Below, in pieces: positions 44,440 through 64,000 of a stretch of DNA of 64,000 nucleotides (its first letter is position 1; the number at the start of each line of letters is the position of its first letter). This DNA is from Auanema rhodensis. Its lineage: Eukaryota > Animalia > Nematoda. The notes beneath the pieces were generated by a model. That model searched no databases. It was not told the origin of the DNA and was given only the letters and a program-made list of their open reading frames with translations. Position numbers and translations under genes: made by a program. The stretch is from positions 10,354,001 through 10,418,000 of the forward strand of contig OZ059898.1 of the NCBI GenBank assembly GCA_964057225.1, in the 5' to 3' direction.

Positions 44440-44510
44440 TGCATCGGCCGGGAATCGAACCCGGGTCGCCCGCGTGGCAGGCGAGCATTCTACCACTGAA
44501 CCACCGATGC
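44440..44510 (-). tRNA. tRNA-Gly(GCC), consensus, subtype B flank
   Basis: Consensus body; T5 terminator. Confidence 0.95.
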
Positions 44511-45074
44511 TTCGAAAATGTTAGATTGTTTCCGAAAAATTATGAAAAGTCAAGTTCTACTGATTTGAAGAGATTTGTAAGTTTTAGAAAAGAATTAAAG
44601 TTCAGCTATCTCTACTATTAACTGATTATCGGCTAAAATAAGGTAACAGTTTTTATTGAAAGTTTCCATGATTAAGATTAAACAAAGAAAAAAAATCAAA
44701 GAGAAACACTTTTTGTTTACTTATTTGATTATAATACTTGAAATTCCAAAAACAGTAGAATAAAATTGAGAAAGCGACAAAAACAATTGAACGATTTGAA
44801 GAGAATTGTAAGTTTTAGAAAAGAATTAAAGTTCAGCTCTCTCTACTATTAACTGAATGTCGGCTAAAATATAGTAACAGTTTTTATAAAAAGTTTCCAT
44901 GATTAAGATTAAACAAAGAAAAAAAAATCAAAGAGAAACACTTCTTGTTTACTAATTTGATTATAACACTTGAAAATCCAACAAAAGTAAAATAAAACTG
45001 TGAAAGCGGGTAAAACTGTTGAACTAAAACAGTCTTTATAAAAAATAAATGATATATTTTTATAAAAGTGAAGT

Positions 45075-45145
45075 TGCATCGGCCGGGAATCTAACCCGGG
45101 TCGCCCGCGTGGCAGGCGAGCATTCTACCACTGAACCACCGATGC
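45075..45145 (-). pseudogene. tRNA-Gly(GCC) C56A variant
   Basis: TTAGA T-loop. Confidence 0.75.
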
Positions 45146-45710
45146 TTCTAAAATGTTAGATTGTTTCCGAAAAATCATGAAAAGTCAAGTTCTACTGATT
45201 TGAAGAGAATTGTAAGTTTTTGAAAATAATTAAAAATTAGTTCTCTCTACTATTAACTGATTGTCGGCTAAAATATGGTAACAGTTTTTATAAAAAATTT
45301 CCATGATTAGGATTAAACAAAGAAAAAAAATCAAAGAGAAACACTTCTTGTTTACTTACTTGATTATACTACTTGAAATACGAAAAAAAGTAAAGAACAA
45401 TTGAGAAAGCGACATAAACAGTTGAACGATTTGAAGAGAATTGTAAGTTTAAGAAAAGAACTAAAGTTTAGCTTTGTCTACTATTAACTGATTATCGGCT
45501 GAAATATGGTAATAGTTTTTTATTAAAAGTTTCCATGATTAAGATTAAACAAAGAAAAAAAAATCAAAGAGAAACACTTCTTGTTTACTAATTTGATTAT
45601 AACACTTGAAAATCCAACAAAAGTAAAATAAAACTGTTAAAGCGAGTAAAACTGTTGAAATAAAACAGTTTTTATTAAATATAAATGATATTTTTTTATA
45701 AAAATGAATT

Positions 45711-45781
45711 TGCATCGGCCGGGAATCGAACCCGGGTCGCCCGCGTGGCAGGCGAGCATTCTACCACTGAACCACCGATGC
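45711..45781 (-). tRNA. tRNA-Gly(GCC), consensus, subtype B flank
   Basis: Consensus body; T5 terminator. Confidence 0.95.
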
Positions 45782-46345
45782 TTCGAAAATGTTAGATTGT
45801 TTCCGAAAAATTATGAAAAGTCAAGTTCTACTGATTTGAAGAGATTTGTAAGTTTTAGAAAAGAATTAAAGTTCAGCTATCTCTACTATTAACTGATTAT
45901 CGGCTAAAATAAGGTAACAGTTTTTATTGAAAGTTTCCATGATTAAGATTAAACAAAGAAAAAAAATCAAAGAGAAACACTTTTTGTTTACTTATTTGAT
46001 TATAATACTTGAAATTCCAAAAACAGTAGAATAAAATTGAGAAAGCGACAAAAACAATTGAACGATTTGAAGAGAATTGTAAGTTTTAGAAAAGAATTAA
46101 AGTTCAGCTCTCTCTACTATTAACTGAATGTCGGCTAAAATATAGTAACAGTTTTTATAAAAAGTTTCCATGATTAAGATTAAACAAAGAAAAAAAAATC
46201 AAAGAGAAACACTTCATGTTTACTAATTTGATTATAACACTTGAAAATCCAACAAAAGTAAAATAAAACTGTGAAAGCGGGTAAAACTGTTGAACTAAAA
46301 CAGTCTTTATAAAAAATAAATGATATATTTTTATAAAAGTGAAGT

Positions 46346-46416
46346 TGCATCGGCCGGGAATCTAACCCGGGTCGCCCGCGTGGCAGGCGAGCATTCTACC
46401 ACTGAACCACCGATGC
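46346..46416 (-). pseudogene. tRNA-Gly(GCC) C56A variant
   Basis: TTAGA T-loop. Confidence 0.75.
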
Positions 46417-46981
46417 TTCTAAAATGTTAGATTGTTTCCGAAAAATCATGAAAAGTCAAGTTCTACTGATTTGAAGAGAATTGTAAGTTTTTGAAAATAA
46501 TTAAAAATTAGTTCTCTCTACTATTAACTGATTGTCGGCTAAAATATGGTAACAGTTTTTATAAAAAATTTCCATGATTAGGATTAAACAAAGAAAAAAA
46601 ATCAAAGAGAAACACTTCTTGTTTACTTACTTGATTATACTACTTGAAATACGAAAAAAAGTAAAGAACAATTGAGAAAGCGACATAAACAGTTGAACGA
46701 TTTGAAGAGAATTGTAAGTTTAAGAAAAGAACTAAAGTTTAGCTTTGTCTACTATTAACTGATTATCGGCTGAAATATGGTAATAGTTTTTTATTAAAAG
46801 TTTCCATGATTAAGATTAAACAAAGAAAAAAAAATCAAAGAGAAACACTTCTTGTTTAGTAATTTGATTATAACACTTGAAAATCCAACAAAAGTAAAAT
46901 AAAACTGTTAAAGCGAGTAAAACTGTTGAAATAAAACAGTTTTTATTAAATATAAATGATATTTTTTTATAAAAATGAATT

Positions 46982-47052
46982 TGCATCGGCCGGGAATCGA
47001 ACCCGGGTCGCCCGCGTGGCAGGCGAGCATTCTACCACTGAACCACCGATGC
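46982..47052 (-). tRNA. tRNA-Gly(GCC), consensus, subtype B flank
   Basis: Consensus body; T5 terminator. Confidence 0.95.
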
Positions 47053-47616
47053 TTCGAAAATGTTAGATTGTTTCCGAAAAATTATGAAAAGTCAAGTTCT
47101 ACTGATTTGAAGAGATTTGTAAGTTTTAGAAAAGAATTAAAGTTCAGCTATCTCTACTATTAACTGATTATCGGCTAAAATAAGGTAACAGTTTTTATTG
47201 AAAGTTTCCATGATTAAGATTAAACAAAGAAAAAAAATCAAAGAGAAACACTTTTTGTTTACTTATTTGATTATAATACTTGAAATTCCAAAAACAGTAG
47301 AATAAAATTGAGAAAGCGACAAAAACAATTGAACGATTTGAAGAGAATTGTAAGTTTTAGAAAAGAATTAAAGTTCAGCTCTCTCTACTATTAACTGAAT
47401 GTCGGCTAAAATATAGTAACAGTTTTTATAAAAAGTTTCCATGATTAAGATTAAACAAAGAAAAAAAAATCAAAGAGAAACACTTCTTGTTTACTAATTT
47501 GATTATAACACTTGAAAATCCAACAAAAGTAAAATAAAACTGTGAAAGCGGGTAAAACTGTTGAACTAAAACAGTCTTTATAAAAAATAAATGATATATT
47601 CTTATAAAAGTGAAGT

Positions 47617-47687
47617 TGCATCGGCCGGGAATCTAACCCGGGTCGCCCGCGTGGCAGGCGAGCATTCTACCACTGAACCACCGATGC
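47617..47687 (-). pseudogene. tRNA-Gly(GCC) C56A variant
   Basis: TTAGA T-loop. Confidence 0.75.
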
Positions 47688-48252
47688 TTCTAAAATGTTA
47701 GATTGTTTCCGAAAAATCATGAAAAGTCAAGTTCTACTGATTTGAAGAGAATTGTAAGTTTTTGAAAATAATTAAAAATTAGTTCTCTCTACTATTAACT
47801 GATTGTCGGCTAAAATATGGTAACAGTTTTTATAAAAAATTTCCATGATTAGGATTAAACAAAGAAAAAAAATCAAAGAGAAACACTTCTTGTTTACTTA
47901 CTTGATTATACTACTTGAAATACGAAAAAAAGTAAAGAACAATTGAGAAAGCGACATAAACAGTTGAACGATTTGAAGAGAATTGTAAGTTTAAGAAAAG
48001 AACTAAAGTTTAGCTTTGTCTACTATTAACTGATTATCGGCTGAAATATGGTAATAGTTTTTTATTAAAAGTTTCCATGATTAAGATTAAACAAAGAAAA
48101 AAAAATCAAAGAGAAACACTTCTTGTTTACTAATTTGATTATAACACTTGAAAATCCAACAAAAGTAAAATAAAACTGTTAAAGCGAGTAAAACTGTTGA
48201 AATAAAACAGTTTTTATTAAATATAAATGATATTTTTTTATAAAAATGAATT

Positions 48253-48323
48253 TGCATCGGCCGGGAATCGAACCCGGGTCGCCCGCGTGGCAGGCGAGCA
48301 TTCTACCACTGAACCACCGATGC
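48253..48323 (-). tRNA. tRNA-Gly(GCC), consensus, subtype B flank
   Basis: Consensus body; T5 terminator. Confidence 0.95.
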
Positions 48324-49348
48324 TTCGAAAATGTTAGATTGTTTCCGAAAAATTATGAAAAGTCAAGTTCTACTGATTTGAAGAGATTTGTAAGTTTTAG
48401 AAAAGAATTAAAGTTCAGCTATCTCTACTATTAACTGATTATCGGCTAAAATAAGGTAACAGTTTTTATTGAAAGTTTCCATGATTAAGATTAAACAAAG
48501 AAAAAAATTCAAAGAGAAACACTTCTTGCTTACTTATTTAATTATAACACTTGAAATTCCAACAAAAGTAAAGTAAAACTGTTAAAGCGAGTAAAACTGT
48601 TGAACGATTTGAAGACAATTGTAAGTTTTAGAAAAGAATTAAAGTTCAGCTATCTCTACTATTAACTGATTATCGGCTAAAATAAGGTAACAGTTTTTAT
48701 TGAAAGTTTCCATGATTATGATTAAACAAAGAAAAAAATCAAAGAGAAACACTTCTTGTTTACTTATTTGATTATAATACTTGAATTTCCAAAAACAGTA
48801 GAATAAAATAGAGAAAGCGACGAAAAAAGTTGAACGATTTGAAGAGAATTGTAAGTTTCAGAAAAGAATCAAAGTTCAGCTATCTCTACTATTAACTGAT
48901 TATCGGCTGAAATAAGGTAACAGTTTTTATTGAAAGTTTCCGTGATTAATATTAAACAAAGAAAAAAAAATCAAAGAAAAACACTTCTTGTTTACTTATT
49001 TGATTATAACACTTGAAATTCCAACAAAAGTAAAGTAAAACTGTTAAAGCGAGTAAAACTGTTGAACGATTTGAAGACAATTGTAAGTTGAAGAAAAAAA
49101 TTAAAGTTTAGCTCTCTCTACTATTAACTGAATGTCGGCTGAAATAAGGTAACAGTTTTTATTAAAAGTTTCCATGATTAAGATTAAACAAAGAAAAAAA
49201 ATCAAAGAGAAACACTTCTTGTTTACTAATTTGATTATAACACTTGAAAATCCAACAAAAGTAAAATAAAACTGTTAAAGCGAGTAAAACTGTTGAAATA
49301 AAACAGTTTTTATTAAATATAAATGATAATTTTTTATAAAAATGAATT

Positions 49349-49419
49349 TGCATCGGCCGGGAATCGAACCCGGGTCGCCCGCGTGGCAGGCGAGCATTCT
49401 ACCACTGAACCACCGATGC
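49349..49419 (-). tRNA. tRNA-Gly(GCC), consensus, subtype B flank
   Basis: Consensus body; T5 terminator. Confidence 0.95.
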
Positions 49420-50444
49420 TTCGAAAATGTTAGATTGTTTCCGAAAAATTATGAAAAGTCAAGTTCTACTGATTTGAAGAGATTTGTAAGTTTTAGAAAA
49501 GAATTAAAGTTCAGCTATCTCTACTATTAACTGATTATCGGCTAAAATAAGGTAACAGTTTTTATTGAAAGTTTCCATGATTAAGATTAAACAAAGAAAA
49601 AAAATCAAAGAGAAACACTTCTTGTTTACTTATTTAATTATAACACTTGAAATTCCAACAAAAGTAAAGTAAAACTGTTAAAGCGAGTAAAACTGTTGAA
49701 CGATTTGAAGACAATTGTAAGTTTTAGAAAAGAATTAAAGTTCAGCTATCTCTACTATTAACTAATTATCGGCTAAAATAAGGTAACAGTTTTTATTGAA
49801 AGTTTCCATGATTATGATTAAACAAAGAAAAAAATCAAAGAGAAACACTTCTTGTTTACTTATTTGATTATAATACTTGAATTTCCAAAAACAGTAGAAT
49901 AAAATAGAGAAAGCGACGAAAAAAGTTGAACGATTTGAAGAGAATTGTAAGTTTCAGAAAAGAATCAAAGTTCAGCTATCTCTACTATTAACTGATTATC
50001 GGCTGAAATAAGGTAACAGTTTTTATTGAAAGTTTCCGTGATAAATATTAAACAAAGAAAAAAAAATCAAAGAAAAACACTTCTTGTTTACTTATTTGAT
50101 TATAACACTTGAAATTCCAACAAAAGTAAAGTAAAACTGTTAAAGCGAGTAAAACTGTTGAACGATTTGAAGACAATTGTAAGTTGAAGAAAAAAATTAA
50201 AGTTTAGCTCTCTCTACTATTAACTGAATGTCGGCTGAAATAAGGTAACAGTTTTTATTAAAAGTTTCCATGATTAAGATTAAACAAAGAAAAAAAATCA
50301 AAGAGAAACACTTCTTGTTTACTAATTTGATTATAACACTTGAAAATCCAACAAAAGTAAAATAAAACTGTTAAAGCGAGTAAAACTGTTGAAATAAAAC
50401 AGTTTTTATTAAATATAAATGATATTTTTTTATAAAAATGAAGT

Positions 50445-50515
50445 TGCATCGGCCGGGAATCGAACACGGGTCGCCCGCGTGGCAGGCGAGCATTCTACCA
50501 CTGAACCACCGATGC
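50445..50515 (-). tRNA. tRNA-Gly(GCC) G52T T-stem variant, subtype B flank
   Basis: + strand GAACACGGG instead of GAACCCGGG. Confidence 0.7.
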
Positions 50516-51540
50516 TTCGAAAATGTTAGATTGTTTCCGAAAAATTATGAAAAGTCAAGTTCTACTGATTTGAAGAGATTTGTAAGTTTTAGAAAAGAAT
50601 TAAAGTTCAGCTATCTCTACTATTAACTGATTATCGGCTAAAATAAGGTAACAGTTTTTATTGAAAGTTTCCATGATTAAGATTAAACAAAGAAAAAAAA
50701 TCAAAGAGAAACACTTCTTGTTTACTTATTTGATTATAACACTTGAAATTCCAACAAAAGTAAAGTAAAACTGTTAAAGCGAGTAAAACTGTTGAACGAT
50801 TTGAAGATAATTGTAAGTTTTAGAAAAGAATTAAAGTTCAGCTATCTCTACTATTAACTGATTATCGGCTAAAATAAGGTAACAGTTTTTATTGAAAGTT
50901 TCCATGATTATGATTAAACAAAGAAAAAAATCAAAGAGAAACACTTCTTGTTTACTTATTTGATTATAATACTTGAATTTCCAAAAACAGTAGAATAAAA
51001 TAGAGAAAGCGACGAAAAAAGTTGAACGATTTGAAGAGAATTGTAAGTTTCAGAAAAGAATCAAAGTTCAGCTATCTCTACTATTAACTGATTATCGGCT
51101 GAAATAAGGTAACAGTTTTTATTAAAAGTTTCCGTGATTAATATTAAACAAAGAAAAAAAAATCAAAGAAAAACACTTCTTGTTTACTTATTTGATTATA
51201 ACACTTGAAATTCCAACAAAAGTAAAGTAAAACTGTTAAAGCGAGTAAAACTGTTGAACGATTTGAAGACAATTGTAAGTTGAAGAAAAAAATTAAAGTT
51301 TAGCTCTCTCTACTATTAACTGAATGTCGGCTGAAATAAGGTAACAGTTTTTATTAAAAGTTTCCATGATTAAGATTAAACAAAGAAAAAAAATCAAAGA
51401 GAAACACTTCTTGTTTACTAATTTGATTATAACACTTGAAAATCCAACAAAAGTAAAATAAAACTGTGAAAGCGGGTAAAACTGTTGAACTAAAACAGTC
51501 TTTATAAAATATAAATGATATTTTTTTATAAAAGTGAAGT

Positions 51541-51611
51541 TGCATCGGCCGGGAATCGAACCCGGGTCGCCCGCGTGGCAGGCGAGCATTCTACCACTGA
51601 ACCACCGATGC
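51541..51611 (-). tRNA. tRNA-Gly(GCC), consensus
   Basis: Same as consensus. Confidence 0.95.
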
Positions 51612-53329
51612 TTCGAAAATGTTAGATTGTTTCCGAAACATTATGAAAAGTCAAGTTCTACTGATTTGAAGAGAATTGTAAGTTTTAGAAAAGAATTAAA
51701 GTTCAGCTATCTCTACTATTAACTGATTATCGGCTAAAATAAGGTAACAGTTTTTATTGAAAGTTTCCATGATTAAGATTAAACAAAGAAAAAAATCAAA
51801 GAGAAACACTTCTTGTTTACTTACTTGATTATAATACTTGAAATTCCAAAAACAGTAAAATAAAATTGAGGAAGCGACAAAAACAGTTGAACGATTTGAA
51901 GAGAATTGTAAGTTTAAGAAAAGATTTAAAGTTTAGCTTTGTCTACTATTAACTGATTATCGGCTGAAATATGGTAACAGTTTTTATTGAAAGTTTCCGT
52001 GATTAAGATTAAACAAAGAAAAAAAAATCAAAGAGAAACACTTCTTGTTTACTTATTTGATTATAACACTTGAAATTCCAACAAAAGTAAAGTAAAATTG
52101 AGAAAGCGACAAAAACAGTTGAACGATTTGAAGAGAATTGTAAGTTTAAGAAAAGATTTAAAGTTTAGCTTTGTCTACTATTAACTGATTATCGGCTGAA
52201 ATATGGTAACAGTTTTTATTGAAAGTTTCCATGATTAAGATTAAACAAATTAAAAAATCAAAGAGAAACACTTCTTGTTTACTTACTTGATTATAATACT
52301 TGAAATTCCAAAAACAGTAAAATAAAATTGAGAAAGCGACAAAAACAGTTGAACGATTTGAAGAGAATTGTAAGTTTAAGAAAAGATTTAAAGTTTAGCT
52401 TTGTCTACTATTAACTGATTATCGGCTGAAATATGGTAACAGTTTTTATTGAAAGTTTCCATGATTAAGATTAAACAAAGAAAAAAATCAAAGAGAAACA
52501 CTTCTTGTTTACTTACTTGATTATAATACTTGAAATTCCAAAAACAGTAAAATAAAATTGAGAAAGCGACAAAAACAGTTGAACGATTTGAAGAGAATTG
52601 TAAGTTTAAGAAAAGATTTAAAGTTTAGCTTTGTCTACTATTAACTGATTATCGGCTGAAATATGGTAACAGTTTTTATTGAAAGTTTCCGTGATTAAGA
52701 TTAAACAAAGGAAAAAAAATCAAAGAGAAACACTTCTTGTTTACTTACTTGATTATAATACTTGAAATTCCAAAAACAGTAAAATAAAATTGAGAAAGCG
52801 ACAAAAACAGTTGAACGATTTGAAGAGAATTGTAAGTTTAAGAAAAGATTTAAAGTTTAGCTTTGTCTACTATTAACTGATTATCGGCTGAAATATGGTA
52901 ACAGTTTTTATTGAAAGTTTCCGTGATTAAGATTAAACAAAGAAAAAAAAATCAAAGAGAAACACTTTTTGTTTACTTATTTGATTATAATACTTGAAAT
53001 TCCAAAAACAGTAGAATAAAATTGAGAAAGCGACAAAAACAGTTGAACGATTTGAAGAGAATTGTAAGTTTTAGAAAAGAATTAAAGTTCAGCTCTCTCT
53101 ACTATTAACTGAATGTCGGCTAAAATATAGTAACAGTTTTTATTAAAAGTTTCCATGATTAAGTTTAAACAAAGAAAAAAAATCAAAGAGAAACACTTCT
53201 TGTTTACTAATTTGATTATAACACTTGAAAATCCAACAAAAGTAAAATAAAACTGTGAAAGCGGGTAAAACTGTTGAACTTAAACAGTATTTATAAAATA
53301 TAAATGATATTTTTTTATAAAAGTGAAGT

Positions 53330-53400
53330 TGCATCGGCCGGGAATCGAACCCGGGTCGCCCGCGTGGCAGGCGAGCATTCTACCACTGAACCACCGATGC
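53330..53400 (-). tRNA. tRNA-Gly(GCC), consensus
   Basis: Same as consensus. Confidence 0.95.
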
Positions 53401-53964
53401 TTCTAAAATGTTAGATTGTTTCCGAAAAATTATGAAAAGTCAAGTTCTACTGATTTGAAGAGAATTCTAAGTTTTTGAAAATAATTAAAAATTAGTTCTC
53501 TCTACTATTAACTGATTGTCGGCTAAAATATGGTAACAGTTTTTATAAAAAATTTCCATGATTAGGATTAAACAAAGAAAAAAATCAAAGAGAAACACTT
53601 CTTGTTTACTCACTTGATTATACTACTTGAAATACGAAAAAAAGTAAAGAACAATTGAGAAAGCGACATAAACAGTTGAACGATTTGAAGAGAATTGTAA
53701 GTTTAAGAAAAGAACTAAAGTTTAGCTTTGTCTACTATTAACTGATTATCGGCTGAAATATGGTAACAGTTTTTTATTAAAAGTTTCCATGATTAAGATT
53801 AAACAAAGAAAAAAAAATCAAAGAGAAACACTTCTTGTTTACTAATTTGATTATAACACTTGAAAATCCAACAAAAGTAAAATAAAACTGTTAAAGCGAG
53901 TAAAACTGTTGAAATAAAACAGTTTTTATTAAATATAAATGATATTTTTTTATAAAAATGAAGT

Positions 53965-54035
53965 TGCATCGGCCGGGAATCGAACCCGGGTCGCCCGCGT
54001 GGCAGGCGAGCATTCTACCACTGAACCACCGATGC
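53965..54035 (-). tRNA. tRNA-Gly(GCC), consensus, subtype B flank; retroelement inserted 68-72 bp upstream
   Basis: Consensus body; T5 terminator; LTR starts at 54108. Confidence 0.95.
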
Positions 54036-54102
54036 TTCGAAAATGTTAGATTGTTTCCGATAAATTATGAAAAGTCAAGTTCTACTGATTTGAAGAGATT
54101 TG

Positions 54103-54107
54103 TAAGT
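54103..54107. other. Left target-site duplication TAAGT
   Basis: Repeated at 63884-63888; single copy in the empty paralogous site 33078-33082. Confidence 0.92.
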
Positions 54108-54171
54108 TGTCGCGATAAGCGAGTGAGTTTGTATAATTTTTTTATCTTCAACAATTGTTTTATTTGTTTCT

Positions 54172-54238
<67 letters not shown>

Positions 54239-54482
54239 TTCTTCTAACTTCCTAAGTAATTTTTATCCATACCACATGTTGTGTTATACATGTGGCATGA
54301 CTAACTCTTTGTTTCAGGCTGACGACCGCCCACGAGAAGAGATCAGTCTTACATTTTTTAACGTTCGCAGTCAGTGATTCTATTCCGTGCTTGTCTTGTT
54401 AATTCATCAATAAACCCTTTTCTACATATTCGCTTTGTGTTTTATTTCCAACCATACTATACACTTGCGGTATAACGCCACA
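54108..54482 (+). repeat. 5' LTR of copy 2 (375 bp), contains (TC)30 at 54175-54234
   Basis: Direct repeat of 63535-63883; followed by AAT and the PBS. Confidence 0.97.
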
Positions 54483-54485
54483 AAT

Positions 54486-54497
54486 TGGTGCATCGGC
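54486..54497 (+). promoter_or_regulatory. Primer-binding site complementary to the 3' 12 nt (incl. CCA) of tRNA-Gly(GCC)
   Basis: TGGTGCATCGGC is the reverse complement of GCCGATGCA-CCA. Confidence 0.93.
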
Positions 54498-54523
54498 TAG
54501 TTCAGATCTTAGCCGCTTCAAGT

Positions 54524-54540
54524 CCCGCGTGGCAGGTGAG
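54524..54540 (+). promoter_or_regulatory. Second tRNA-Gly-complementary box (anticodon arm) overlapping a candidate splice donor CAG|GTGAG
   Basis: CCCGCGTGGCAGGTGAG vs tRNA complement CCCGCGTGGCAGGCGAG (16/17; the mismatch is a G:U pair). Confidence 0.8.
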
Positions 54541-54763
54541 ATACAGCTCAAACCAAGCGTGTTTGAGCAAAAAACATACTTAATAGAAATCGTGGCAACC
54601 ATTAGTCCACGTCAAGTCACACCAAAAAGACTTGAACCATAAGCAAACTCTGCAGACAGAAACAGAGATTCACTATCACATATACTGTGATCACCAAACA
54701 AACAAAAAAAAAAAAAGAGAAAGTAAAAGGAATATAAGCATTATTCCTACATCTACGACAAAA

Positions 54764-57700
54764 ATGTCACTCCTTTTTGTCAATCATATCAAACAGTCTA
54801 ACCAGTTTCTCGGAGAATTACTTACACGATACGAGATGGAAGTGAAGGACCTTCCTGGTATTCTGGTAGATTGCGACTTCCACACTGAGGAAGAAGAGGA
54901 AACCCTCTCTTGCCTTATCATTCGCTGGACAAAAGTCCAACACCAATTCAAAGAATCGTTGAAAAATCATCAAGATAACGAGAAAAAATTCCAAAAATTT
55001 TACGAAGCATCAGACAAAACGCTTCGTAAAGCATTAGACGAACAGTACATCGCCTTCACATCCGATGAAGACTTTGAACCCAACATTAAAAAGGTTCAAA
55101 ACGCCATTATTGAGCTTGACGAACACATCATGAAAGCCGAACGCATACTTAGAAAGCTGAGAAAAACGCTTCATAAGAATGAATCTGAGCACAACAGCAA
55201 TCGCTCAACAGAAAACAATGAAACAGAAAACAAATCGAATGATCAATTTCTGGAAATTATCAAGTCATTCCTACACATCCAACAAACTAGTATCCAAAAA
55301 CCAGCGATGTCGCTACCTACATTTGATGGCAAACCAGAGAACTTCAAATCATTCTGGGGCCGTTTTGATAGACTTGTTCATGATAATGAACAGTTTACAA
55401 CCTTAGAAAAGGTAAACCTACTCTGTGAAAGCCTCAAAGGCGATTCACAAATAGCAATCAGAGGAATAGAACCCTCTGCTCAAAATTATGAGCTTATGCG
55501 TGAAGCATTAGTTTCTGAATTTGGAGACTATTCGTCGGATATCAACTCTCTTTTGACACAACTACGTAATTTGAAATTTGCAAGCAATAATGCAAAAGCA
55601 TGCAAAGAAACATTTGGAGAAACCAAGGCACTTATCAGGCAAATTGAAGCAGCCGGAGCTACAGTATCCCGCGAAATGTGTACCGCGATGATTCTCAACA
55701 AATTCCCATACCACATCGTGGAAGACATTCTAATTCATCCAAACAACTACCATTCTACTAAAGAAATGCTGACAGCTGTAGACCACAAAATCTATTCCTT
55801 TTTTCTAAAAGAACAAACAAGAAATAGTCATGAACAAAAGTTTCGAAATCACAAAGACAATGTCACATCTGTTTCACATAAAGACAGCACTGCAGAACAA
55901 CGGAAAACCCAAACTTGGCCATGTGTCTTTTGCGACTCATCCGAGCATCGTTTTTATCAATGCACCACATTTGAAACACCAGAGAAAAGAAGGTACCGCA
56001 TTCGCGGAAAGGCCATCTGTTGGATTTGCTTTTCCGATAAACACAAAAGTTCGGAATGCAGAAAACAAAAATGTCGCAATTGCCAAGGAGATCATAATTC
56101 CGCCTTGTGCTCACAAGGAAGAAAAAGTGTACAAAATATCCAAAAAGATAAAGAAACTCCCACAATTAAAAAAGATCAGGCTTTACTGATCACCACAGAA
56201 GAATTATTGAATAAAAAAACAACAGAATATAAACAAGAATCTGACACTAATAATCGAATCCCTACTGAGGCACTTAATGCACCAGTATCGCTTAATCACA
56301 TTGCTGACACACATAATATTGAAGAAAGTCAAGTAATATTACGAACAGCAATGGCGAACATATACAACCACAATAGTAAAAAATATGAGCAAGTACGCAT
56401 GCTCATAGATGAAGGATCCATGAGATCTTTTATATCCAAGGACCTATCTACAAGATTAGGACTGCCCATTCTTGGTTCTCAGAAGAGAACCTTTTACGGC
56501 ATTGGAGCATTATCAGAAACACATGAAGTTGAAGATGTTAAGGTAATTATTGGAACCTCAACTGGATCCCTTATCGTAACAAAACTGTTCACAAAACCCA
56601 TGTTAACCACACCTATACGGTGTCCTAAACTATCTAATGAAGACTTAAAATTCATACAAAGAAGAAAAATTAAATTAGCCAATCCAAAAACAAACGGAGA
56701 ATCATTTACTCCGGATATACTGATAGGTATGGATAGATACAAACTATTCATGCACTTAAACGAAGAAACCGAACTCCCCTCACGTATGAGATTGAAAAAC
56801 TCGGTATTCGGCCACATGATACATGGGGAAGCTCCTCTTCCCGATGATAATACACAACAAGAAGTAATATTATGCTCTACATTAGAAGAGATAACAAAAG
56901 AAACCTCTCATAAAGAACTCCTCACTAATCTGTTTGAACTGGATTCTATCGGCATCAATACAGAAAATGCCAACGCAGACCGCACTATTGATTACTATGA
57001 AGAATACTCAAAAGATATAAAAATTGAGAACAACCGTATTATTGCACCGTTCCCGTTAAAAAATAACTTCAAAAATCTCAAAAACAACAAAATGCCCGCG
57101 TACCATAGATTCGTATCCCTATGGCGAAAGTTACTGCACAATCCAGAAATGCTCTCACACTATACTACAACCATTGAAAGTTACCTCAAAGATAACATTG
57201 TCGAACAAATTCCCAACAATCACCAGGAGCCTTTAGAGTTTTATATGCCCCACCATGGGGTTTGGAAGCCCAGCAAGGCTAACCCTCTCAGAATCGTTTT
57301 TGACGCCTCCGCTAAACAGAAGGATAGCCCATCGTTGAATGAGATAATACACACAGGACGATCATTTATCACATATATACACGACATCATGATCTCCTGC
57401 AGAACAAGACCAATAATAATAACATGCGATATTAAAGCCGCATTTCTACAAGTACAATTGACAGAAAATCACAAGAATTTATGCAAATTCTTTTGGATAA
57501 AAAACAAAGAATACCCAATATCACACAATAATATCATAACCCTTCGATTCAACAGATTACCATTCGGTATCACTGCATCCCCCAGCGTATTGAACATGGG
57601 CATAAAATGGTTCTTAGAATCAAAAGTAGACAACCCATTAGCTATGGAAATCCTGCACAACTTATACGTCGACAATATCATTCTTACAGCAAATACAACC

Positions 57701-60700
57701 GAAGAAGCTATAAAGAAATGTAAAGAAACCCAAACACTATTCTCAGAAATAAACATGCATGTTCGCGAATTCTTGTCAAACGATGAACAAGTAATACAGA
57801 ACCTTCCTGAAGAAGACAGATATCCGAACATGACAACCAAAATACTTGGCATATCTTTTAATAAAGAACACGACTCCTTCATTATCCCAATAAAAATAAC
57901 AACGACTCACACAAGTTACACCAAGAGAATTCTACTCAGTCAGTTACATTCAATATTTGATCCCATTGGATTATCAGCACCAATACTGTTACCCCTCAAA
58001 CTTATCTTGCGAGAAATCATTAGCACAAAATTATCATGGGACCAACCCATTGACTCAAACAGTATCAAGCAATGGGAACAACATATTACTCAGATTAACA
58101 ATAAGCAATTAACCATGAACAGATATTTTAAGTTTTCTGAACATGAAACACAGTTATGGGTCTTCGCTGACGCAAGCAACCAAGCAATGGCCGCTTGTTC
58201 ATATTTCCAAACAAATGGGAAGATTAGTTCTCTGCTCAACGGGAAATCACGCATAGCACCCAAAAATAAAACTACAATTCCACGATTAGAGTTACTAGCC
58301 ATTCGTTTAGCTGTACGAATGGCATTATCTATCGTCACCATATGTCCGAAAATAGCGAAAGTTAACATTGTGAGCGATAGCAACATCGCACTATCATGGA
58401 TTGTCTCACAAAAATCTCTCCCACTGTTCATTAATAATCAAACAAATACTATAAAGAAACAACTCAAGCAAATCGAACAAATATGTTGCAATATAGAACT
58501 ATATCACGTACAAACCTCGTTCAACACAGCAGACATCGGATCTCGAGGTGCAGACATGGAAAAACTACAAGTTTCCGACTGGATTGAAGGCCCACATTGG
58601 TTAACTAAACTTTCCGTGCATAACCCTCTGACATCACTCGGCTCACCTAACAACTCGAGCAGGAATAACGCAGAATTAAAATCGGAGCATCACAATGTTG
58701 TCCACATAATCATAGACAATCCTCCAACCCATGATATTTGGAACATTCGTGAAAACTATGATGACGTGATCAAAACAATGACAACCGTAGGGAAATTATT
58801 CAAGAAATGGTTTTTCACAGTCCATCCTAACGACGCCAACAAGTTGCAAAAAATAAAACATCTCACATCAACAGACACGCACACTGTTGAAGACATCAAC
58901 ATTATTGAAAAAATTTTGATCAGTAACAGTCAATCTAATATGAGCCTTGATGACTTACAGCAAAGACATATAAATCTAAAATTCTTCAAAGATACATGGG
59001 ATATTTATCGCGTAAGAAGCCGTTTACAAAATACTCTTCTTCCCGAAGAGACGAAAAACCCTATATTCCTTCTTAAAACAAACCCCATAGTTAAAAAACT
59101 GATCAACAAAATACACAAAGACAATAATCATCAAGGCAAACATTTCACGCTTATTCAACTCAGACAAAAGTTCTATATACCAAAAACAACCGGAGTCATT
59201 AAGCAAACATTGAAAAACTGTGTGACATGTAAAAGATTTCAATCACACCCTTATGAATTACCAGATATGCCATCGCTACCAAAAGATAGAACGATTCTTA
59301 CAAGAGCATTCTTTTCAACAGGGTGTGATCTTATGGGCCCCTTCACCCTTCGAAATGGGTCTAAAGTCCATATCTGTCTGTTTACATGCATGACAACTAG
59401 AGCAATTCACTTAGAGGTAGTCACCAATCAATCCACAGTTGCTTTTATGAATGCATTCACTAGATTTATATCACGCAGAGGTACTCCAGAAATTATGCGT
59501 AGTGACTGCGCAGGAAACTTTATATTGAGCTCAAAAATATTAGAAACCCTTGAAAAAACATCGGATTACAACGAAAGAAGCTTACTAAACACACTAGCAC
59601 AACAAAAAATTAAATGGATATACAACACTCCATTATCACCCTGGAAAGGTGGATGTTGGGAACGTTTAGTAGGTGTAACCAAAGCTTCACTCAAAAAATG
59701 TTTCATTCCTAGTCGAATGTCCCTGGATGACTTACACACAGCCATTGTAAAAATAGAAGCTATAATTAATACACGCCCACTCACCCATCCACACCCAGAT
59801 AATTTAGATACTCTACCCATAAGGCCAATTGACTTTTTAACATCAGCCATAAAGTTTTCATTACCTGAAAACAACGCGGATACTCATATATTTGATATCC
59901 ATAGCGATATTCAAACGATTCAATCAACAGAGCAAGCGCTAGAAGCGCTTCAATTATCAGAAGACTCAGCATCTAAATTTTGGAAACGATTTCAAGAAGA
60001 ATATCTAACAAGCTTAAAAGATATATTTAAGCATAAACACCATAGAAAAAATCACACAAACATCTTCCCCCAACCAGATGAAATAGTATTGATACAAAAC
60101 GACATGTTGCCACGAGGAACATGGAAACTAGGTCGCATCATTGAAACAATCACTAGTTCAGATGGCAACATACGTTCAGCAAAAGTTGCAACAAGCAACG
60201 GAAACATAATTACTCGATCTATCAATCAGCTCTATCCACTAGAGATAAGATGCAACACTAGCAACAACAAAATCATAGAAGACAACTCACACATAGTCCA
60301 AGAAAATAATAGCTCAACAGATAGAATACCACATACTGATACCGTATTAGACAACATACACTCCGATCATCCTATAGAACATACAGATGAAACAATACAT
60401 GAGAACAATAACATAAATGATAGCAACCATAATTACGATATTGCATATGAATCAGATAACTCTCAACATGATAATACATACACTCCAGAAACAGAGAATA
60501 ATGAGGATGCAACAAATGATCGACCTCAAAATAAAACAAAGCTATCATCAGTAAAAACAGCAAAATATACAGAACAAGATGAGGTCACTGAGAAGGAAAA
60601 TATAAAAGCCTTCCCACTAAAAATGTCCTATGCCACACACCAAAGAAAAAATAAAATAAACCCAAAAATAGCAGCTGACATAATGAAAGCCCTTTCATTA

Positions 60701-62695
60701 CCGATTATAATTACTTCGACGTATGCCGAAGAAATCAATAGTTGCAAGGACTCTAACATGTTCACCACAAAACTTATAGCGAATCCTCATTGCTCCCCAG
60801 AAATGGCAACATGGACAGTGATAATAACCATTATGGCAGTTACCCTCATAGTCTCTTGTCTATGCCGCATGGGTTACAGCCAATATAGATATAAGACATG
60901 GTCCAGAAACACTCAAACCATGCTCAACATCATGAAATTAAAACATAAAACAATCTCCGAACAAGAAGATCATGAAACTGATCAAAAAATAACAGAAGAC
61001 CACAATGATACGTTGCAATTAAAACAAACGAACACACAAGACGCTAATATTGTGGATCATGAAACCTTTCAAAAGCATATTTACCCTATTTTAAACCATA
61101 CGAGAAAGCCACCAAAATTCTCTCTCTTTACTAGAGGGTCGCAAACATCTTTACCATCGTTACTGGCAATCATCTTGGCTTTATGTATTGGAAGCTGCAG
61201 TTCATGTTCCGATGTTCATGTTCAACACTTCGTTAACATACGATGCGATGACAACTTAGCTTGTTATCACGAATACAGTCAAGATATCATATTTTCTCCC
61301 GGAACAAAACAATTATGCATTACCATAACGCATTCTAATCATGAAATTGGTCAATTTAAAATAACTAAACTATATACTGAACATGTCTGCCAGAAGAATA
61401 CTAGATACTTCACTAGACAGACAACCGTCAACATATTGAGCATATTACGATGCCGTCACCGGGGCTCGTGTGACGGAACATGTGAAACTAACTCGCTTCA
61501 TAATAAAATCGTGGAACTACAACCATATACGTTCCCTTCACAATCAGGTTGCTTCACATCGTCAGCAAGATTTTACACATGTCCTATGATTTGGACAGAT
61601 CCGTGCCTTTTCTACAAAATAGAGCATATACCCGTCACTGAGGAAGTATACGAAGTCTATACTTGTGATAGTTGGTCCACCCAAACCGTATTTAATATAG
61701 AAACAACATTACTCCAGCAGAAAAATAATTACAATATCACTCTACAACCTTACACGAAAAATCGTGAACAACTTTTCAATATAACAACGTTATCACAATC
61801 ACAACCTCCTCCAGAAATGTACACAAAATTATTTTTTTCCTCCAAAGAAAACACGTACATTACGGATATACACACAAAGGGAATAATTCAATGTGGAACA
61901 GAGGAAGCCGCATTAAAACATTTTAATAACTGTACAGTATCCTCATTCTGCCCTTGCACATTCAATAGATTTGATGACATAAAATGTAGGTGTGATACCC
62001 CTACTTTTGAAAAAATGTCCAATACATCAGACATAAAATCTCCTAACCAAAACTTTAAAACTAAAGATAACACGTTATCATTCTCTACGAATTTAGACGA
62101 AAATTTAGTTACGGTCGATTCATCCCTATTCTTAAACTCAGTGATCTTCTCCAACAATTTGCCCTGCGCACCTGCCCTGACAAAACTATCAGGTTGCTAC
62201 TCCTGCGGGCAGGGTGCATTCGCAGAATTCCAATGCCTTACGGCAGAAGAAACATGGATTTCTATCGAATGTCAAAAAGAAGTATTCATGATAAAATGCT
62301 CTCCAAAAGTAGCAATCACAAAAGTAACAATGAAAAGAGAAAATTCTCAGATTGATGAATTATGCTATACCACATGCGACAATAAAAAAATTAAGATCAT
62401 TATTAAAGGAATATTACATCACATAGCAAGCATAGATGAAATAAACGAAAGTGACTCAAGTAAGGGTACAGAATCCAAATCCATTGACTTTGCTCCAATC
62501 TTCAAGTTAATTTTATCAAAGTTGGGAATCATATTGATAGGTGTTGCAATAACCGCCACCATAGGATATGTGGCATGTACACCCATCATGTACTGTGTAG
62601 TTTTGAATACAGTCTTAACCACACAATGGATAGCTACCAGGATATTCACACTGTGGATAAAATCAAAAGCCTTATTTCGGGATCAAAGATTTTAA
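54764..62695 (+). CDS. Gag-Pol-Env polyprotein (2,643 aa from first ATG)
   Basis: AAAAATG start at 54764 (track start 54632 is TTG). DUF1759-like PTFDGKPENFKSFW; three CCHC knuckles ~55922-56110; protease LIDEGS...ILIGMD; RT YMPHH/RIVFDAS/DIKAAF/RLPFG/YVDN; Pao RNase H FADAS/TIPRLEL; integrase HHCC+DDE; Gc-like env from ~61205. Confidence 0.97.
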   Translation: MSLLFVNHIKQSNQFLGELLTRYEMEVKDLPGILVDCDFHTEEEEETLSCLIIRWTKVQHQFKESLKNHQDNEKKFQKFYEASDKTLRKALDEQYIAFTSDEDFEPNIKKVQNAIIELDEHIMKAERILRKLRKTLHKNESEHNSNRSTENNETENKSNDQFLEIIKSFLHIQQTSIQKPAMSLPTFDGKPENFKSFWGRFDRLVHDNEQFTTLEKVNLLCESLKGDSQIAIRGIEPSAQNYELMREALVSEFGDYSSDINSLLTQLRNLKFASNNAKACKETFGETKALIRQIEAAGATVSREMCTAMILNKFPYHIVEDILIHPNNYHSTKEMLTAVDHKIYSFFLKEQTRNSHEQKFRNHKDNVTSVSHKDSTAEQRKTQTWPCVFCDSSEHRFYQCTTFETPEKRRYRIRGKAICWICFSDKHKSSECRKQKCRNCQGDHNSALCSQGRKSVQNIQKDKETPTIKKDQALLITTEELLNKKTTEYKQESDTNNRIPTEALNAPVSLNHIADTHNIEESQVILRTAMANIYNHNSKKYEQVRMLIDEGSMRSFISKDLSTRLGLPILGSQKRTFYGIGALSETHEVEDVKVIIGTSTGSLIVTKLFTKPMLTTPIRCPKLSNEDLKFIQRRKIKLANPKTNGESFTPDILIGMDRYKLFMHLNEETELPSRMRLKNSVFGHMIHGEAPLPDDNTQQEVILCSTLEEITKETSHKELLTNLFELDSIGINTENANADRTIDYYEEYSKDIKIENNRIIAPFPLKNNFKNLKNNKMPAYHRFVSLWRKLLHNPEMLSHYTTTIESYLKDNIVEQIPNNHQEPLEFYMPHHGVWKPSKANPLRIVFDASAKQKDSPSLNEIIHTGRSFITYIHDIMISCRTRPIIITCDIKAAFLQVQLTENHKNLCKFFWIKNKEYPISHNNIITLRFNRLPFGITASPSVLNMGIKWFLESKVDNPLAMEILHNLYVDNIILTANTTEEAIKKCKETQTLFSEINMHVREFLSNDEQVIQNLPEEDRYPNMTTKILGISFNKEHDSFIIPIKITTTHTSYTKRILLSQLHSIFDPIGLSAPILLPLKLILREIISTKLSWDQPIDSNSIKQWEQHITQINNKQLTMNRYFKFSEHETQLWVFADASNQAMAACSYFQTNGKISSLLNGKSRIAPKNKTTIPRLELLAIRLAVRMALSIVTICPKIAKVNIVSDSNIALSWIVSQKSLPLFINNQTNTIKKQLKQIEQICCNIELYHVQTSFNTADIGSRGADMEKLQVSDWIEGPHWLTKLSVHNPLTSLGSPNNSSRNNAELKSEHHNVVHIIIDNPPTHDIWNIRENYDDVIKTMTTVGKLFKKWFFTVHPNDANKLQKIKHLTSTDTHTVEDINIIEKILISNSQSNMSLDDLQQRHINLKFFKDTWDIYRVRSRLQNTLLPEETKNPIFLLKTNPIVKKLINKIHKDNNHQGKHFTLIQLRQKFYIPKTTGVIKQTLKNCVTCKRFQSHPYELPDMPSLPKDRTILTRAFFSTGCDLMGPFTLRNGSKVHICLFTCMTTRAIHLEVVTNQSTVAFMNAFTRFISRRGTPEIMRSDCAGNFILSSKILETLEKTSDYNERSLLNTLAQQKIKWIYNTPLSPWKGGCWERLVGVTKASLKKCFIPSRMSLDDLHTAIVKIEAIINTRPLTHPHPDNLDTLPIRPIDFLTSAIKFSLPENNADTHIFDIHSDIQTIQSTEQALEALQLSEDSASKFWKRFQEEYLTSLKDIFKHKHHRKNHTNIFPQPDEIVLIQNDMLPRGTWKLGRIIETITSSDGNIRSAKVATSNGNIITRSINQLYPLEIRCNTSNNKIIEDNSHIVQENNSSTDRIPHTDTVLDNIHSDHPIEHTDETIHENNNINDSNHNYDIAYESDNSQHDNTYTPETENNEDATNDRPQNKTKLSSVKTAKYTEQDEVTEKENIKAFPLKMSYATHQRKNKINPKIAADIMKALSLPIIITSTYAEEINSCKDSNMFTTKLIANPHCSPEMATWTVIITIMAVTLIVSCLCRMGYSQYRYKTWSRNTQTMLNIMKLKHKTISEQEDHETDQKITEDHNDTLQLKQTNTQDANIVDHETFQKHIYPILNHTRKPPKFSLFTRGSQTSLPSLLAIILALCIGSCSSCSDVHVQHFVNIRCDDNLACYHEYSQDIIFSPGTKQLCITITHSNHEIGQFKITKLYTEHVCQKNTRYFTRQTTVNILSILRCRHRGSCDGTCETNSLHNKIVELQPYTFPSQSGCFTSSARFYTCPMIWTDPCLFYKIEHIPVTEEVYEVYTCDSWSTQTVFNIETTLLQQKNNYNITLQPYTKNREQLFNITTLSQSQPPPEMYTKLFFSSKENTYITDIHTKGIIQCGTEEAALKHFNNCTVSSFCPCTFNRFDDIKCRCDTPTFEKMSNTSDIKSPNQNFKTKDNTLSFSTNLDENLVTVDSSLFLNSVIFSNNLPCAPALTKLSGCYSCGQGAFAEFQCLTAEETWISIECQKEVFMIKCSPKVAITKVTMKRENSQIDELCYTTCDNKKIKIIIKGILHHIASIDEINESDSSKGTESKSIDFAPIFKLILSKLGIILIGVAITATIGYVACTPIMYCVVLNTVLTTQWIATRIFTLWIKSKALFRDQRF

Positions 62696-62997
62696 AAGCA
62701 TAAGAGAAGAATTTCTTGTGGAGATAAAATTTAAAATTAAAAATTGAAATAATAATGAAACAAAAGAAAAAGAAAGCATTATGTACGAATATAACCATTG
62801 TAATAAAACAATATCATTGTTTTTCTTTCTTTTCAATTTATGGTAGTATCAAGTTTCTTTTATCCAACTCAGTTACATAACACATAACCTTTTGTACAGG
62901 CTCTAAAATTCATTGTATCTGTAACAAGATAACCTAAACACACCATTGTACAATGAACTAATAGATGTTAATCAGCGTTTAAAGTCCAGATGTGAAC

Positions 62998-63504
62998 ATG
63001 TATATAAGGATGCAGATCATGTCTTTCCTATATTCCATGAAAATGGAAGATATTGTCTCGAATATAATTGAGAATGCTTCCTTTGAGGAAGAGCTCAAAA
63101 AATATTCCCATCTACCTAACACTGCTGCCAATCTGAGGCAACTAATTGTGCTTGAAAAGAGGCTCTACGAGCACCTAGCTAGCGCGGTGAACCATCTATC
63201 CGAACGACTGGACAATATTCAACATTCGTTAAATCTGAAACTAGACAATTTGACCATTCAGACTGCTCCTAAAGCTTCATGTGTATTCTGCAATAAACCG
63301 ACAGCTGATGGGCACCGTACTGCGGCCTGTCCGATTTATCCTTCCTCACCGGAACGCACTCTCCGTCTTCATGAACTGGGGTTATGCATCAGATGTTTGA
63401 ATCAAAAACATCCAGCGATATGCGAGGTATCCTGCTATAGATGTAAGGCGGATACGCATCATGGAGTGGTTTGTGGAGATATAAAACGTAAAAGACCTTT
63501 GTAG
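62998..63504 (+). CDS. Accessory ORF with three CCHC zinc knuckles (nucleocapsid-like)
   Basis: Same translation as 4761-5267; start uncertain. Confidence 0.8.
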   Translation: MYIRMQIMSFLYSMKMEDIVSNIIENASFEEELKKYSHLPNTAANLRQLIVLEKRLYEHLASAVNHLSERLDNIQHSLNLKLDNLTIQTAPKASCVFCNKPTADGHRTAACPIYPSSPERTLRLHELGLCIRCLNQKHPAICEVSCYRCKADTHHGVVCGDIKRKRPL

Positions 63505-63534
63505 GCCTTCTTCTCATTCCCGAATTGCCGGGAG

Positions 63535-63598
63535 TGTCGCGATAAGCGAGTGAGTTTGTATAATTTTTTTATCTTCAACAATTGTTTTATTTGTTTCT

Positions 63599-63639
<41 letters not shown>

Positions 63640-63883: not shown

Positions 63884-64000
63884 TAAGTTTTAGAAAAAAA
63901 TTAAAGTTCAGCTGTCTCTACTATTAACTGATTATCGGCTAAAATAAGGTAACAGTTTTTATTAAAAGTTTCCGTGATTAATATTAAACAAAGAAAAAAA
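63884..64000. repeat. Right TSD (TAAGT) and resumption of the 231-bp satellite
   Basis: Satellite continues in register from 54107. Confidence 0.93.

What the first reader, a model, noticed from the sequence alone, without database searches (positions are those of the whole stretch)
53965..54110. Candidate tRNA-gene-targeting, envelope-bearing BEL/Pao element that integrates upstream of the gene for its own primer tRNA
Seen: copy 2 (TSD TAAGT 54103-54107) lies 68-72 bp 5' of the minus-strand tRNA-Gly at 53965-54035, divergently oriented. The right flank of copy 1 (5669: AAGAGATTTGTAAGTTTTAGAAAAGAATTAAAGTTCAG) carries the GAGATTTG variant, which I find only directly upstream of tRNA genes in this array. 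That places its site (putative TSD AAGAG) at -58 to -62, exactly 10 bp (about one helical turn) from the copy 2 site, in the same orientation. Different junctions imply two independent insertions. Most monomers lack tRNA, yet both hits fall in the same ~15-bp window. Established: integration near Pol III genes is known for Ty1, Ty3 and Dictyostelium DGLT-A/TRE elements; I know of no such case for a BEL/Pao element with env. Inference: Pol III/TFIIIB- or nucleosome-guided targeting into a multicopy safe harbour that also supplies the primer. Caveat: n=2, and the left flank of copy 1 is outside the window.
Basis: partly seen in the sequence, partly recalled or inferred. Interest (0 to 1): 0.92.

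Follow-up and report, generated by a model that had tools for sequence, protein, structure and literature searches.

The report
Worm retrovirus-like element beside tRNA genes
Two young copies of an envelope-carrying retrovirus-like element, one complete and one cut off by the window edge, sit about 60-70 bases upstream of glycine-tRNA genes in a tRNA/satellite array. This hints at tRNA-gene-directed integration in an animal, but two insertions cannot prove it.

Summary
The window is a 48.4-kb array of 231-bp satellite monomers with 47 minus-strand tRNA-Gly(GCC) genes. It is bracketed by two plus-strand copies of one LTR element.

Copy 2 (54108-63883) is complete. It has a clean 5-bp duplication (TAAGT) at -68 to -72 of the tRNA gene at 53965-54035 and points away from that gene. 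The flank of copy 1 carries GAGATTTG, which otherwise occurs only directly upstream of tRNA genes (14 of 14). Its first 200 bp match four such sites exactly. Copy 1 therefore very probably lies at -58 to -62 of another tRNA-Gly gene. The junctions differ, so these are two separate insertions.

The element is an intact BEL/Pao (belpaovirus) with one 2687-codon Gag-Pol-Env frame. Its envelope is phlebovirus Gc-like and closest to the hookworm Atlas virus, so an envelope-bearing BEL/Pao is already known. Its primer site matches tRNA-Gly, which is typical of the family.

Targeting of tRNA genes would be new for this family and for animals, but it is not shown. Among 170 homologous monomer junctions, two tRNA-adjacent hits have p about 0.08. 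Both sites also follow the same hexamer, GATTTG, so sequence preference remains a live rival. I did not fetch further copies; that step is referred.

The parts
1..5668 (+). Copy 1 of the element, cut by the left end of the window. It holds the 3' part of the polyprotein frame, the post-env ORF and the 3' LTR.
   Evidence: It aligns to the last 5.6 kb of copy 2 with 2 substitutions and one microsatellite-length gap. The visible 1485 codons have no stops and 2 amino-acid differences from copy 2.
5298..5668 (+). 3' LTR of copy 1 (371 bp)
   Evidence: Exact matches to both LTR ends. It differs from the other LTRs only in (CT)n length.
5669..5673 (+). AAGAG, the presumed right-hand target-site duplication of copy 1. 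In tRNA-adjacent units this pentamer lies at -58 to -62.
   Evidence: The duplication itself is unverified because the left flank is outside the window.
5669..54107 (.). Host array of 231-bp satellite monomers (about 172 junctions) with 47 tRNA-Gly(GCC) units of about 172 bp inserted between monomers
   Evidence: No other RNA family was found in the stretch searched, 22400-26800. No element-derived fragments lie inside the array.
53965..54035 (-). tRNA-Gly(GCC) gene next to copy 2. It has the commonest sequence (26 of 47 genes) and belongs to the 'type A' units.
54103..54107 (+). Left target-site duplication TAAGT of copy 2, at -68 to -72 of the tRNA gene
54108..63883 (+). Copy 2, a complete element of 9776 bp oriented away from the tRNA gene
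54108..54482 (+). 5' LTR of copy 2 (375 bp, TG...CA ends, (CT)n microsatellite inside)
54486..54497 (+). Primer-binding site: 12 nt complementary to the 3' end of tRNA-Gly(GCC) plus CCA, starting 3 nt after the LTR
54764..62695 (+). Single Gag-Pol-Env polyprotein frame, counted from the first ATG (the open frame itself starts at 54632 and has 2687 codons). Approximate domain bounds: Gag DUF1759 55322-55717; two CCHC knuckles 55922-56059; RT 57371-57763; Pao 'Peptidase_A17' 57920-58381; integrase zinc domain 59090-59245; DUF5641 59951-60241; Gc fusion domain 61205-62083; Gc C-terminal domain 62165-62605.
   Evidence: No stop codons.
62992..63504 (+). 170-codon ORF between env and the 3' LTR, with three zinc-knuckle-like motifs. 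It is identical in copy 1 (4755-5267).
   Evidence: No Pfam family.
63535..63883 (+). 3' LTR of copy 2 (349 bp)
   Evidence: It has no substitutions against the 5' LTR, only a 26-bp (CT)n length difference.
63884..63888 (+). Right target-site duplication TAAGT of copy 2

Best explanation
The element is a young, apparently intact, Atlas-like endogenous belpaovirus (a BEL/Pao LTR element with a phlebovirus-type Gn-Gc envelope), probably in a nematode. It inserted at least twice, independently, into a tRNA-Gly/satellite array. Each time it landed about 60-70 bp upstream of a tRNA-Gly(GCC) gene, with its 5' LTR facing that gene.

The most likely reading is position-specific integration. On this reading the integration complex is steered to the upstream edge of tRNA genes by something bound there: the Pol III initiation complex or the first upstream nucleosome. 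A local preference for the base step after GATTTG may add to this.

Shown:
- the anatomy of the element;
- that the two insertion events are independent;
- the exact site of copy 2;
- the diagnostic flank of copy 1.

Inferred:
- the tRNA gene to the left of copy 1;
- any role of Pol III factors.

The match between the primer-binding site and the neighbouring gene is best read as coincidence. tRNA-Gly priming is typical of the family, and this array offers only tRNA-Gly genes.
For: - Clean TAAGT duplication at -68 to -72 of a tRNA-Gly gene.
- The copy 1 flank carries the tRNA-unit-specific variant (14 of 14 elsewhere, 0 of about 123 tRNA-less junctions). It is 200/200 identical to four tRNA-adjacent sites.
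- The junctions differ and the flanking monomers differ, so the two events are independent.
- Both copies have the same orientation.
- The copies differ by 2 substitutions in 5.6 kb. The LTRs of copy 2 differ only in microsatellite length, and all frames are open, so the insertions are recent.
- The array holds no other insertions or element fragments.
- Uniform placement in the array gives p about 0.002 for both insertions lying within 100 bp upstream of a tRNA gene and within 10 bp of each other in register.
- The tight target specificities of LTR elements reviewed in PMC5911963 work by tethering to bound factors. From my own knowledge this holds for LTR elements generally. That makes a tether a more likely cause than pure sequence reading.
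Against: - There are only two insertions, and one tRNA neighbour is inferred rather than seen.
- Against the fairer null (170 homologous monomer junctions, 47 next to a tRNA), p is only 0.076.
- Both sites follow the same hexamer GATTTG, and both lie in the same 'type A' sequence variant. A sequence-driven choice fits the two data points at least as well.
- The window has no other Pol III gene type, so generality cannot be judged.
- No targeting domain was identified. The integrase region shows only the domains usual for the family, with no solved relative.
- Survivorship in a gene-free array could inflate the apparent preference.
Confidence: 0.45

Rival explanations
1. Sequence- or satellite-directed integration. 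The integration complex prefers a DNA motif of this array: the step after GATTTG, or the doubled motif found only in 'type A' units. Closeness to the tRNA gene is then a by-product, because that variant happens to sit next to tRNA genes.
For: - Both target pentamers are directly preceded by GATTTG.
- The second GATTTG exists only in the 14 type A units, all of them tRNA-adjacent. The 10-bp offset equals the spacing of this direct repeat.
- If tRNA units were chosen at random, both insertions falling in type A units would have p = 0.089. A type-A-specific motif explains this better.
Against: - GATTTG followed by a pentamer occurs 187 times on this strand of the array. If the hexamer alone sufficed, two hits in type A units would be unlikely (about 0.01-0.02; counts).
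- The shared hexamer lies on one side only and shows no two-fold symmetry (read). From my own knowledge, integrase target preferences are usually symmetric.
- From my own knowledge, strict sequence-specific targeting is very rare among LTR elements.
Confidence: 0.3
2. No real targeting. The element inserts broadly, and copies persist in this gene-free, recombination-poor array because they do no harm there. The shared position is chance.
For: - Only two events are known.
- p = 0.076 under the homologous-junction null.
- The window was picked out because it looked striking.
Against: - Two very young, independent insertions lie in one 48-kb array, in the same orientation and 10 bp apart in register. 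That has p about 0.002 for uniform placement in the array.
- The copies are too young for long-term filtering to have shaped their positions.
Confidence: 0.15
3. One insertion was later copied with part of the array by unequal crossing-over or segmental duplication.
For: The copies are nearly identical. The array shows higher-order repeats in its tRNA spacing.
Against: - The 3' junctions differ by 10 bp, and each reads straight into the uninterrupted array sequence.
- Copy 2 has a perfect duplication.
- The flanking monomers differ at 5 of 112 positions.
Confidence: 0.02

Closest known systems
Atlas virus and Atlas-like endogenous belpaoviruses of nematodes (PMC9094657; bioRxiv 10.64898/2026.03.22.711591); from my own knowledge also C. 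elegans Cer13
   Same: - An LTR element of about 9-10 kb.
- One uninterrupted Gag-Pol-Env polyprotein (2687 codons here, 2828 in Atlas).
- Pao-type Pol domains.
- A phlebovirus Gc-like class II fusion protein. The best solved relative is Atlas Gc, 7a4a, E = 3e-20.
- LTRs that are identical or nearly so.
   Different: - Pol is only about 41% identical to the nearest named proteins, from Ancylostoma and Haemonchus.
- Neither Atlas paper reports integration sites or tRNA neighbours.
- This element has an extra zinc-knuckle ORF after env. I did not check whether relatives have one.
Pol III-gene-targeting retrotransposons: Ty1, Ty3, Tj1, DGLT-A and TRE5-A (review PMC5911963)
   Same: Insertions lie in a narrow window upstream of tRNA genes, in a multicopy and dispensable target.
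   Different: - Those elements are Ty1/copia, Ty3/gypsy or non-LTR types, and all are from fungi or Dictyostelium. The review lists no BEL/Pao or animal case.
- The positions differ. The review gives 1-10 bp before the start site for Ty3 and Tj1, 13-33 bp for DGLT-A and a window of about 1 kb for Ty1. TRE5-A sits about 50 bp upstream (from my own knowledge; the abstract is cut off before the figure). Here the sites are 58-72 bp upstream.
- Here n = 2, and no host factor is known.
Satellite- or repeat-specific insertion of mobile elements (rDNA-, microsatellite- or snRNA-gene-specific non-LTR elements, e.g. Utopia, PMC4640811)
   Same: Repeated insertion at one position of a tandem repeat unit.
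   Different: Those elements use a sequence-specific endonuclease and insert at one exact base step. This is an integrase element with two different 5-bp duplications 10 bp apart.

Membership tests
BEL/Pao LTR retrotransposons (Belpaoviridae) | LTRs with TG...CA ends flanking the element, and a short target-site duplication | tested here: met
   The LTRs are 375 and 349 bp and differ only in (CT)n length. The duplication is 5 bp, TAAGT.
BEL/Pao LTR retrotransposons (Belpaoviridae) | Pao-type Gag and Pol domains, with the integrase after the reverse transcriptase | tested here: met
   DUF1759, RVT_1, Peptidase_A17 (E = 8e-40), Integrase_H2C2 and DUF5641 occur in that order. Relatives carry the same set.
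BEL/Pao LTR retrotransposons (Belpaoviridae) | Primer-binding site complementary to tRNA-Gly or tRNA-Arg (ICTV profile, PMC8742986) | tested here: met
   12 contiguous nt match tRNA-Gly(GCC) plus CCA, starting 3 nt after the LTR. The profile speaks of 18 nt; here the match stops at 12.
Atlas-like viruses of nematodes | Single Gag-Pol-Env polyprotein with a phlebovirus Gn-Gc-like envelope | tested here: met
   One open frame of 2687 codons. Phlebovirus_G2 E = 1.6e-41 and Phlebo_G2_C E = 1e-5. Atlas Gc 7a4a E = 3e-20. The Gn part has no family match.
Atlas-like viruses of nematodes | Capsid core more than 50% identical to the Atlas capsid core (criterion of the 2026 preprint) | not tested
   No Atlas capsid sequence came back from the solved-structure search with this Gag, and I fetched no comparator.
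Atlas-like viruses of nematodes | Nematode host | not testable with these tools
   The source of the window is unknown. The nearest named relatives are strongylid nematode proteins at about 41% identity.
Pol III-gene-targeting retrotransposons | Insertions concentrated at a fixed distance upstream of Pol III genes across many independent copies | tested here: inconclusive
   Two insertions, at -68 to -72 (seen) and -58 to -62 (inferred), in the same orientation.
Pol III-gene-targeting retrotransposons | Homologous DNA without a Pol III gene is not used | tested here: inconclusive
   0 of about 123 tRNA-less junctions are occupied, against 2 of 48 tRNA-adjacent ones. p is about 0.08.
Pol III-gene-targeting retrotransposons | Several kinds of Pol III genes are used (different tRNAs, 5S) | not testable with these tools
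   The window holds only tRNA-Gly(GCC) genes.
Pol III-gene-targeting retrotransposons | An element protein binds a Pol III or TFIIIB/TFIIIC subunit | not testable with these tools
   No candidate domain was found beyond those usual for the family.

The most novel reading that the evidence does not exclude
This would be the first retrovirus-like LTR element of an animal, and the first member of Belpaoviridae, whose integration is directed to the upstream edge of Pol III-transcribed tRNA genes, in one orientation and about 60-70 bp from the gene. That would be a third independent origin of the strategy known from yeast Ty elements and Dictyostelium elements, here in an element that also carries a complete viral fusion envelope.
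Probability: 0.4. Interest if true: 0.8.

Novelty: new variant of a known kind. Interest (0 to 1): 0.58.

Why it matters
tRNA-gene targeting is the textbook example of a mobile element choosing a harmless landing site. So far it is known only from compact fungal and amoebal genomes. Finding it in an animal, in a different retroelement family, would show that the strategy evolves repeatedly. It would also give a natural system for comparing how integrases read Pol III chromatin. The element belongs to a group of nematode endogenous viruses whose integration behaviour has not been described in the papers I could read. The tRNA/satellite array, with its 17 B-box variant genes, also allows an internal comparison between likely active and inactive targets.

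Tried and rejected
- I looked for further insertions or solo LTRs inside the array with sensitive blastn (word size 7). There were none, so the window gives only two events.
- I tested whether the tRNA-less monomers hide another RNA gene, using an Rfam E-value search of 22400-26800. Only the tRNA genes were found.
- I searched solved structures with the Gag and integrase regions. There were no hits. One search was a frame slip that I corrected.
- The bacterial promoter/terminator scan does not apply to this organism, and I ignored it.
- Six of the seven literature searches looked for a BEL/Pao or other animal LTR element targeting tRNA genes, tRNA-Gly satellite arrays in nematodes, or Cer7/Cer13 insertion sites. 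Nothing relevant came up. The library lacks most subscription journals, so this is weak evidence of absence.
- I rejected the single-insertion-plus-duplication idea on the junction evidence.
- I rejected a causal link between the primer tRNA and its neighbouring gene. The primer tRNA is taken up as RNA, and I know of no mechanism by which the position of its gene would matter.
- I considered searching a host-only satellite pattern in metagenome contigs to name the host. I left it out: the gain was small, and it might have pulled in more copies of the element.

Full report
**What is in the window**

ARAGORN finds 47 tRNA-Gly(GCC) genes, all on the minus strand, between 6869 and 54035. Tandem Repeats Finder shows that they are embedded in a 231-bp satellite. 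The array (5669-54107) has about 172 monomer junctions. At 47 of them a tRNA unit of about 172 bp precedes the monomer.

An Rfam search of 22400-26800 finds nothing but the tRNA genes. The tRNA-less monomers in that stretch therefore carry no recognisable Pol III gene.

The array is AT-rich (26-30% G+C). It is bracketed by two blocks of 33-39% G+C.

**The element**

Exact LTR-end matches define three LTRs.

- Copy 2 runs from 54108 to 63883 (9776 bp), with LTRs of 375 and 349 bp.
- Copy 1 is cut by the window's left end and finishes at 5668.
- The two LTRs of copy 2 have no substitutions and differ only in the length of an internal (CT)n run.
- The copies differ by 2 substitutions over 5.6 kb.

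Copy 2 carries one open frame of 2687 codons with no stop. The 1485 codons visible in copy 1 are also open. No gene of the element is broken in either copy.

Pfam gives these domains, in order:

- DUF1759 (Gag);
- two CCHC knuckles (from the motif scan);
- RVT_1;
- Peptidase_A17, the Pao signature (E = 8e-40);
- Integrase_H2C2;
- DUF5641;
- Phlebovirus_G2 (E = 1.6e-41);
- Phlebo_G2_C.

The best solved relative of the envelope part is 7a4a (E = 3e-20). This is the Gc protein of the Atlas virus of the hookworm Ancylostoma ceylanicum (PMC9094657). [quoted passage not shown]

The nearest named Pol relatives come from Ancylostoma and Haemonchus, at about 41% identity. The element is therefore a fairly distant new member of the nematode 'Atlas-like' belpaoviruses. 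The host is probably a nematode, but that is not proven.

The primer-binding site (54486-54497) pairs with 12 nt of tRNA-Gly(GCC) plus CCA. The ICTV profile states that belpaoviruses use tRNA-Gly or tRNA-Arg, so this is typical of the family.

**The insertion sites**

Copy 2 is flanked by TAAGT on both sides. Taking the element out restores the uninterrupted array sequence. The left TAAGT lies 68-72 bp from the 5' end of the tRNA gene at 53965-54035, and the element points away from that gene.

Copy 1 is followed by AAGAGATTTGTAAGT.... Its junction is 10 bp nearer to where a tRNA gene would be.

- The octamer GAGATTTG occurs 15 times in the window. Fourteen are at the same offset from a tRNA 5' end, and the fifteenth is this flank.
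- The 33 other tRNA-adjacent junctions and all of the roughly 123 tRNA-less junctions have a different base there.
- The first 200 bp of the copy 1 flank are identical to four tRNA-adjacent sites. The best tRNA-less monomer has 2 mismatches.

A simple Bayes estimate gives 0.88-0.97 that copy 1 is tRNA-adjacent. I use about 0.9, because the 14 units are related through higher-order repeats (see the spacing pattern).

The two 3' junctions differ, and the neighbouring monomers differ at 5 of 112 positions. These are two separate integration events, not one duplicated insertion.

**How much this proves**

Under uniform placement in the array, p is about 0.002 for both insertions lying within 100 bp upstream of a tRNA gene and within 10 bp of each other in register. 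Some positional preference is therefore likely.

The fairer question is whether the tRNA gene matters or only the repeated sequence does. Every monomer offers the homologous junction, and 47 of 170 junctions are tRNA-adjacent, which gives p = 0.076. That is suggestive and no more.

Both target pentamers are directly preceded by the same hexamer: GATTTG|AAGAG and GATTTG|TAAGT. The second GATTTG exists only in the 14 units I call 'type A'. In those units the two hexamers form a 10-bp direct repeat. Type A units mostly carry:

- the commonest tRNA sequence (12 of the 14);
- TTCG just before the gene;
- a five-T run after it.

The 10-bp offset therefore fits a sequence preference as well as it fits helical phasing.

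The hexamer alone cannot be sufficient, because it occurs 187 times on this strand of the array. It is also one-sided, which is not what a two-fold symmetric integration complex would normally read.

**Weighing the explanations**

- Guidance by something bound at the tRNA gene: 0.45.
- Motif or satellite preference: 0.30.
- Chance plus tolerance in a gene-free array: 0.15.
- One insertion later duplicated: 0.02.

**Comparison with what is known**

The review of Pol III-targeting retrotransposons (PMC5911963) lists only fungal and Dictyostelium elements of the copia, gypsy and non-LTR kinds. It does not mention BEL/Pao, nematodes or animals. The two Atlas papers do not mention tRNA or integration sites. 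My other literature searches found no such report.

If the targeting is real, it would be a new variant of a known strategy in a new family and kingdom. The envelope and the tRNA-Gly primer are not new. The idea that the array 'supplies the primer' has no mechanistic basis that I can see.

The decisive evidence would be more independent copies, and those could only come from outside the window. I did not try, and I list the step as referred.

One slip: in private reasoning I wrote two tRNA-Gly sequences and a B-box consensus from memory.

The statement that the changed base in 17 genes is the invariant C at position 56 of the T loop, which is important for TFIIIC binding, rests on my own knowledge of tRNA promoters. 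No tool result supports it.

Noticed in passing
window 62992-63504 (copy 2) and 4755-5267 (copy 1): A 170-codon ORF lies between the env stop and the 3' LTR and is identical in both copies. Its C-terminal half has three zinc-knuckle-like motifs and resembles the nucleocapsid part of the element's own Gag (28% identity over 79 residues, pairwise E = 3e-7). It has no Pfam family. It could be an accessory gene or a relic of a Gag duplication.
   Followed up: partly
17 of the 47 tRNA genes, e.g. window 11080-11150, 14653-14723 and 15922-15992: These genes share one substitution (plus-strand base 18, G to T). It changes the C at T-loop position 56 inside the B box, and the Rfam score drops from 66.6 to 64.4 bits. 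They are likely weakened or inactive Pol III templates kept within the array. Both element copies sit beside units of the type that mostly has the unchanged gene.
   Followed up: partly
window 54175-54232, 5364-5417 and 63602-63633 (inside the three LTRs): A (CT)n microsatellite in the LTR differs in length among the three LTRs, which total 375, 371 and 349 bp and are otherwise identical. Even the two LTRs of one copy differ. This points to slippage during or after reverse transcription.
   Followed up: no
window 36016-36145 and 38393-38522: Two perfect 64-bp tandem duplications that fuse parts of a monomer recur 2377 bp apart. This marks a rearranged monomer that was itself copied as part of a higher-order repeat.
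   Followed up: no
window 21228-24702 versus 26651-30586: The spacing of tRNA genes (635, 634, 636, 864/865 bp, ...) repeats with a period of about 5.4 kb. Other runs have periods of 1096 and 1271 bp. The array has grown by higher-order duplications, so its units are not independent samples.
   Followed up: partly
window 54060-54069 and the same offset in other units: An A/T-rich, TATA-like stretch lies 25-34 bp upstream of each tRNA gene. The insertion sites are two to four helical turns further upstream, outside where a TFIIIB-type footprint would be expected.
   Followed up: no
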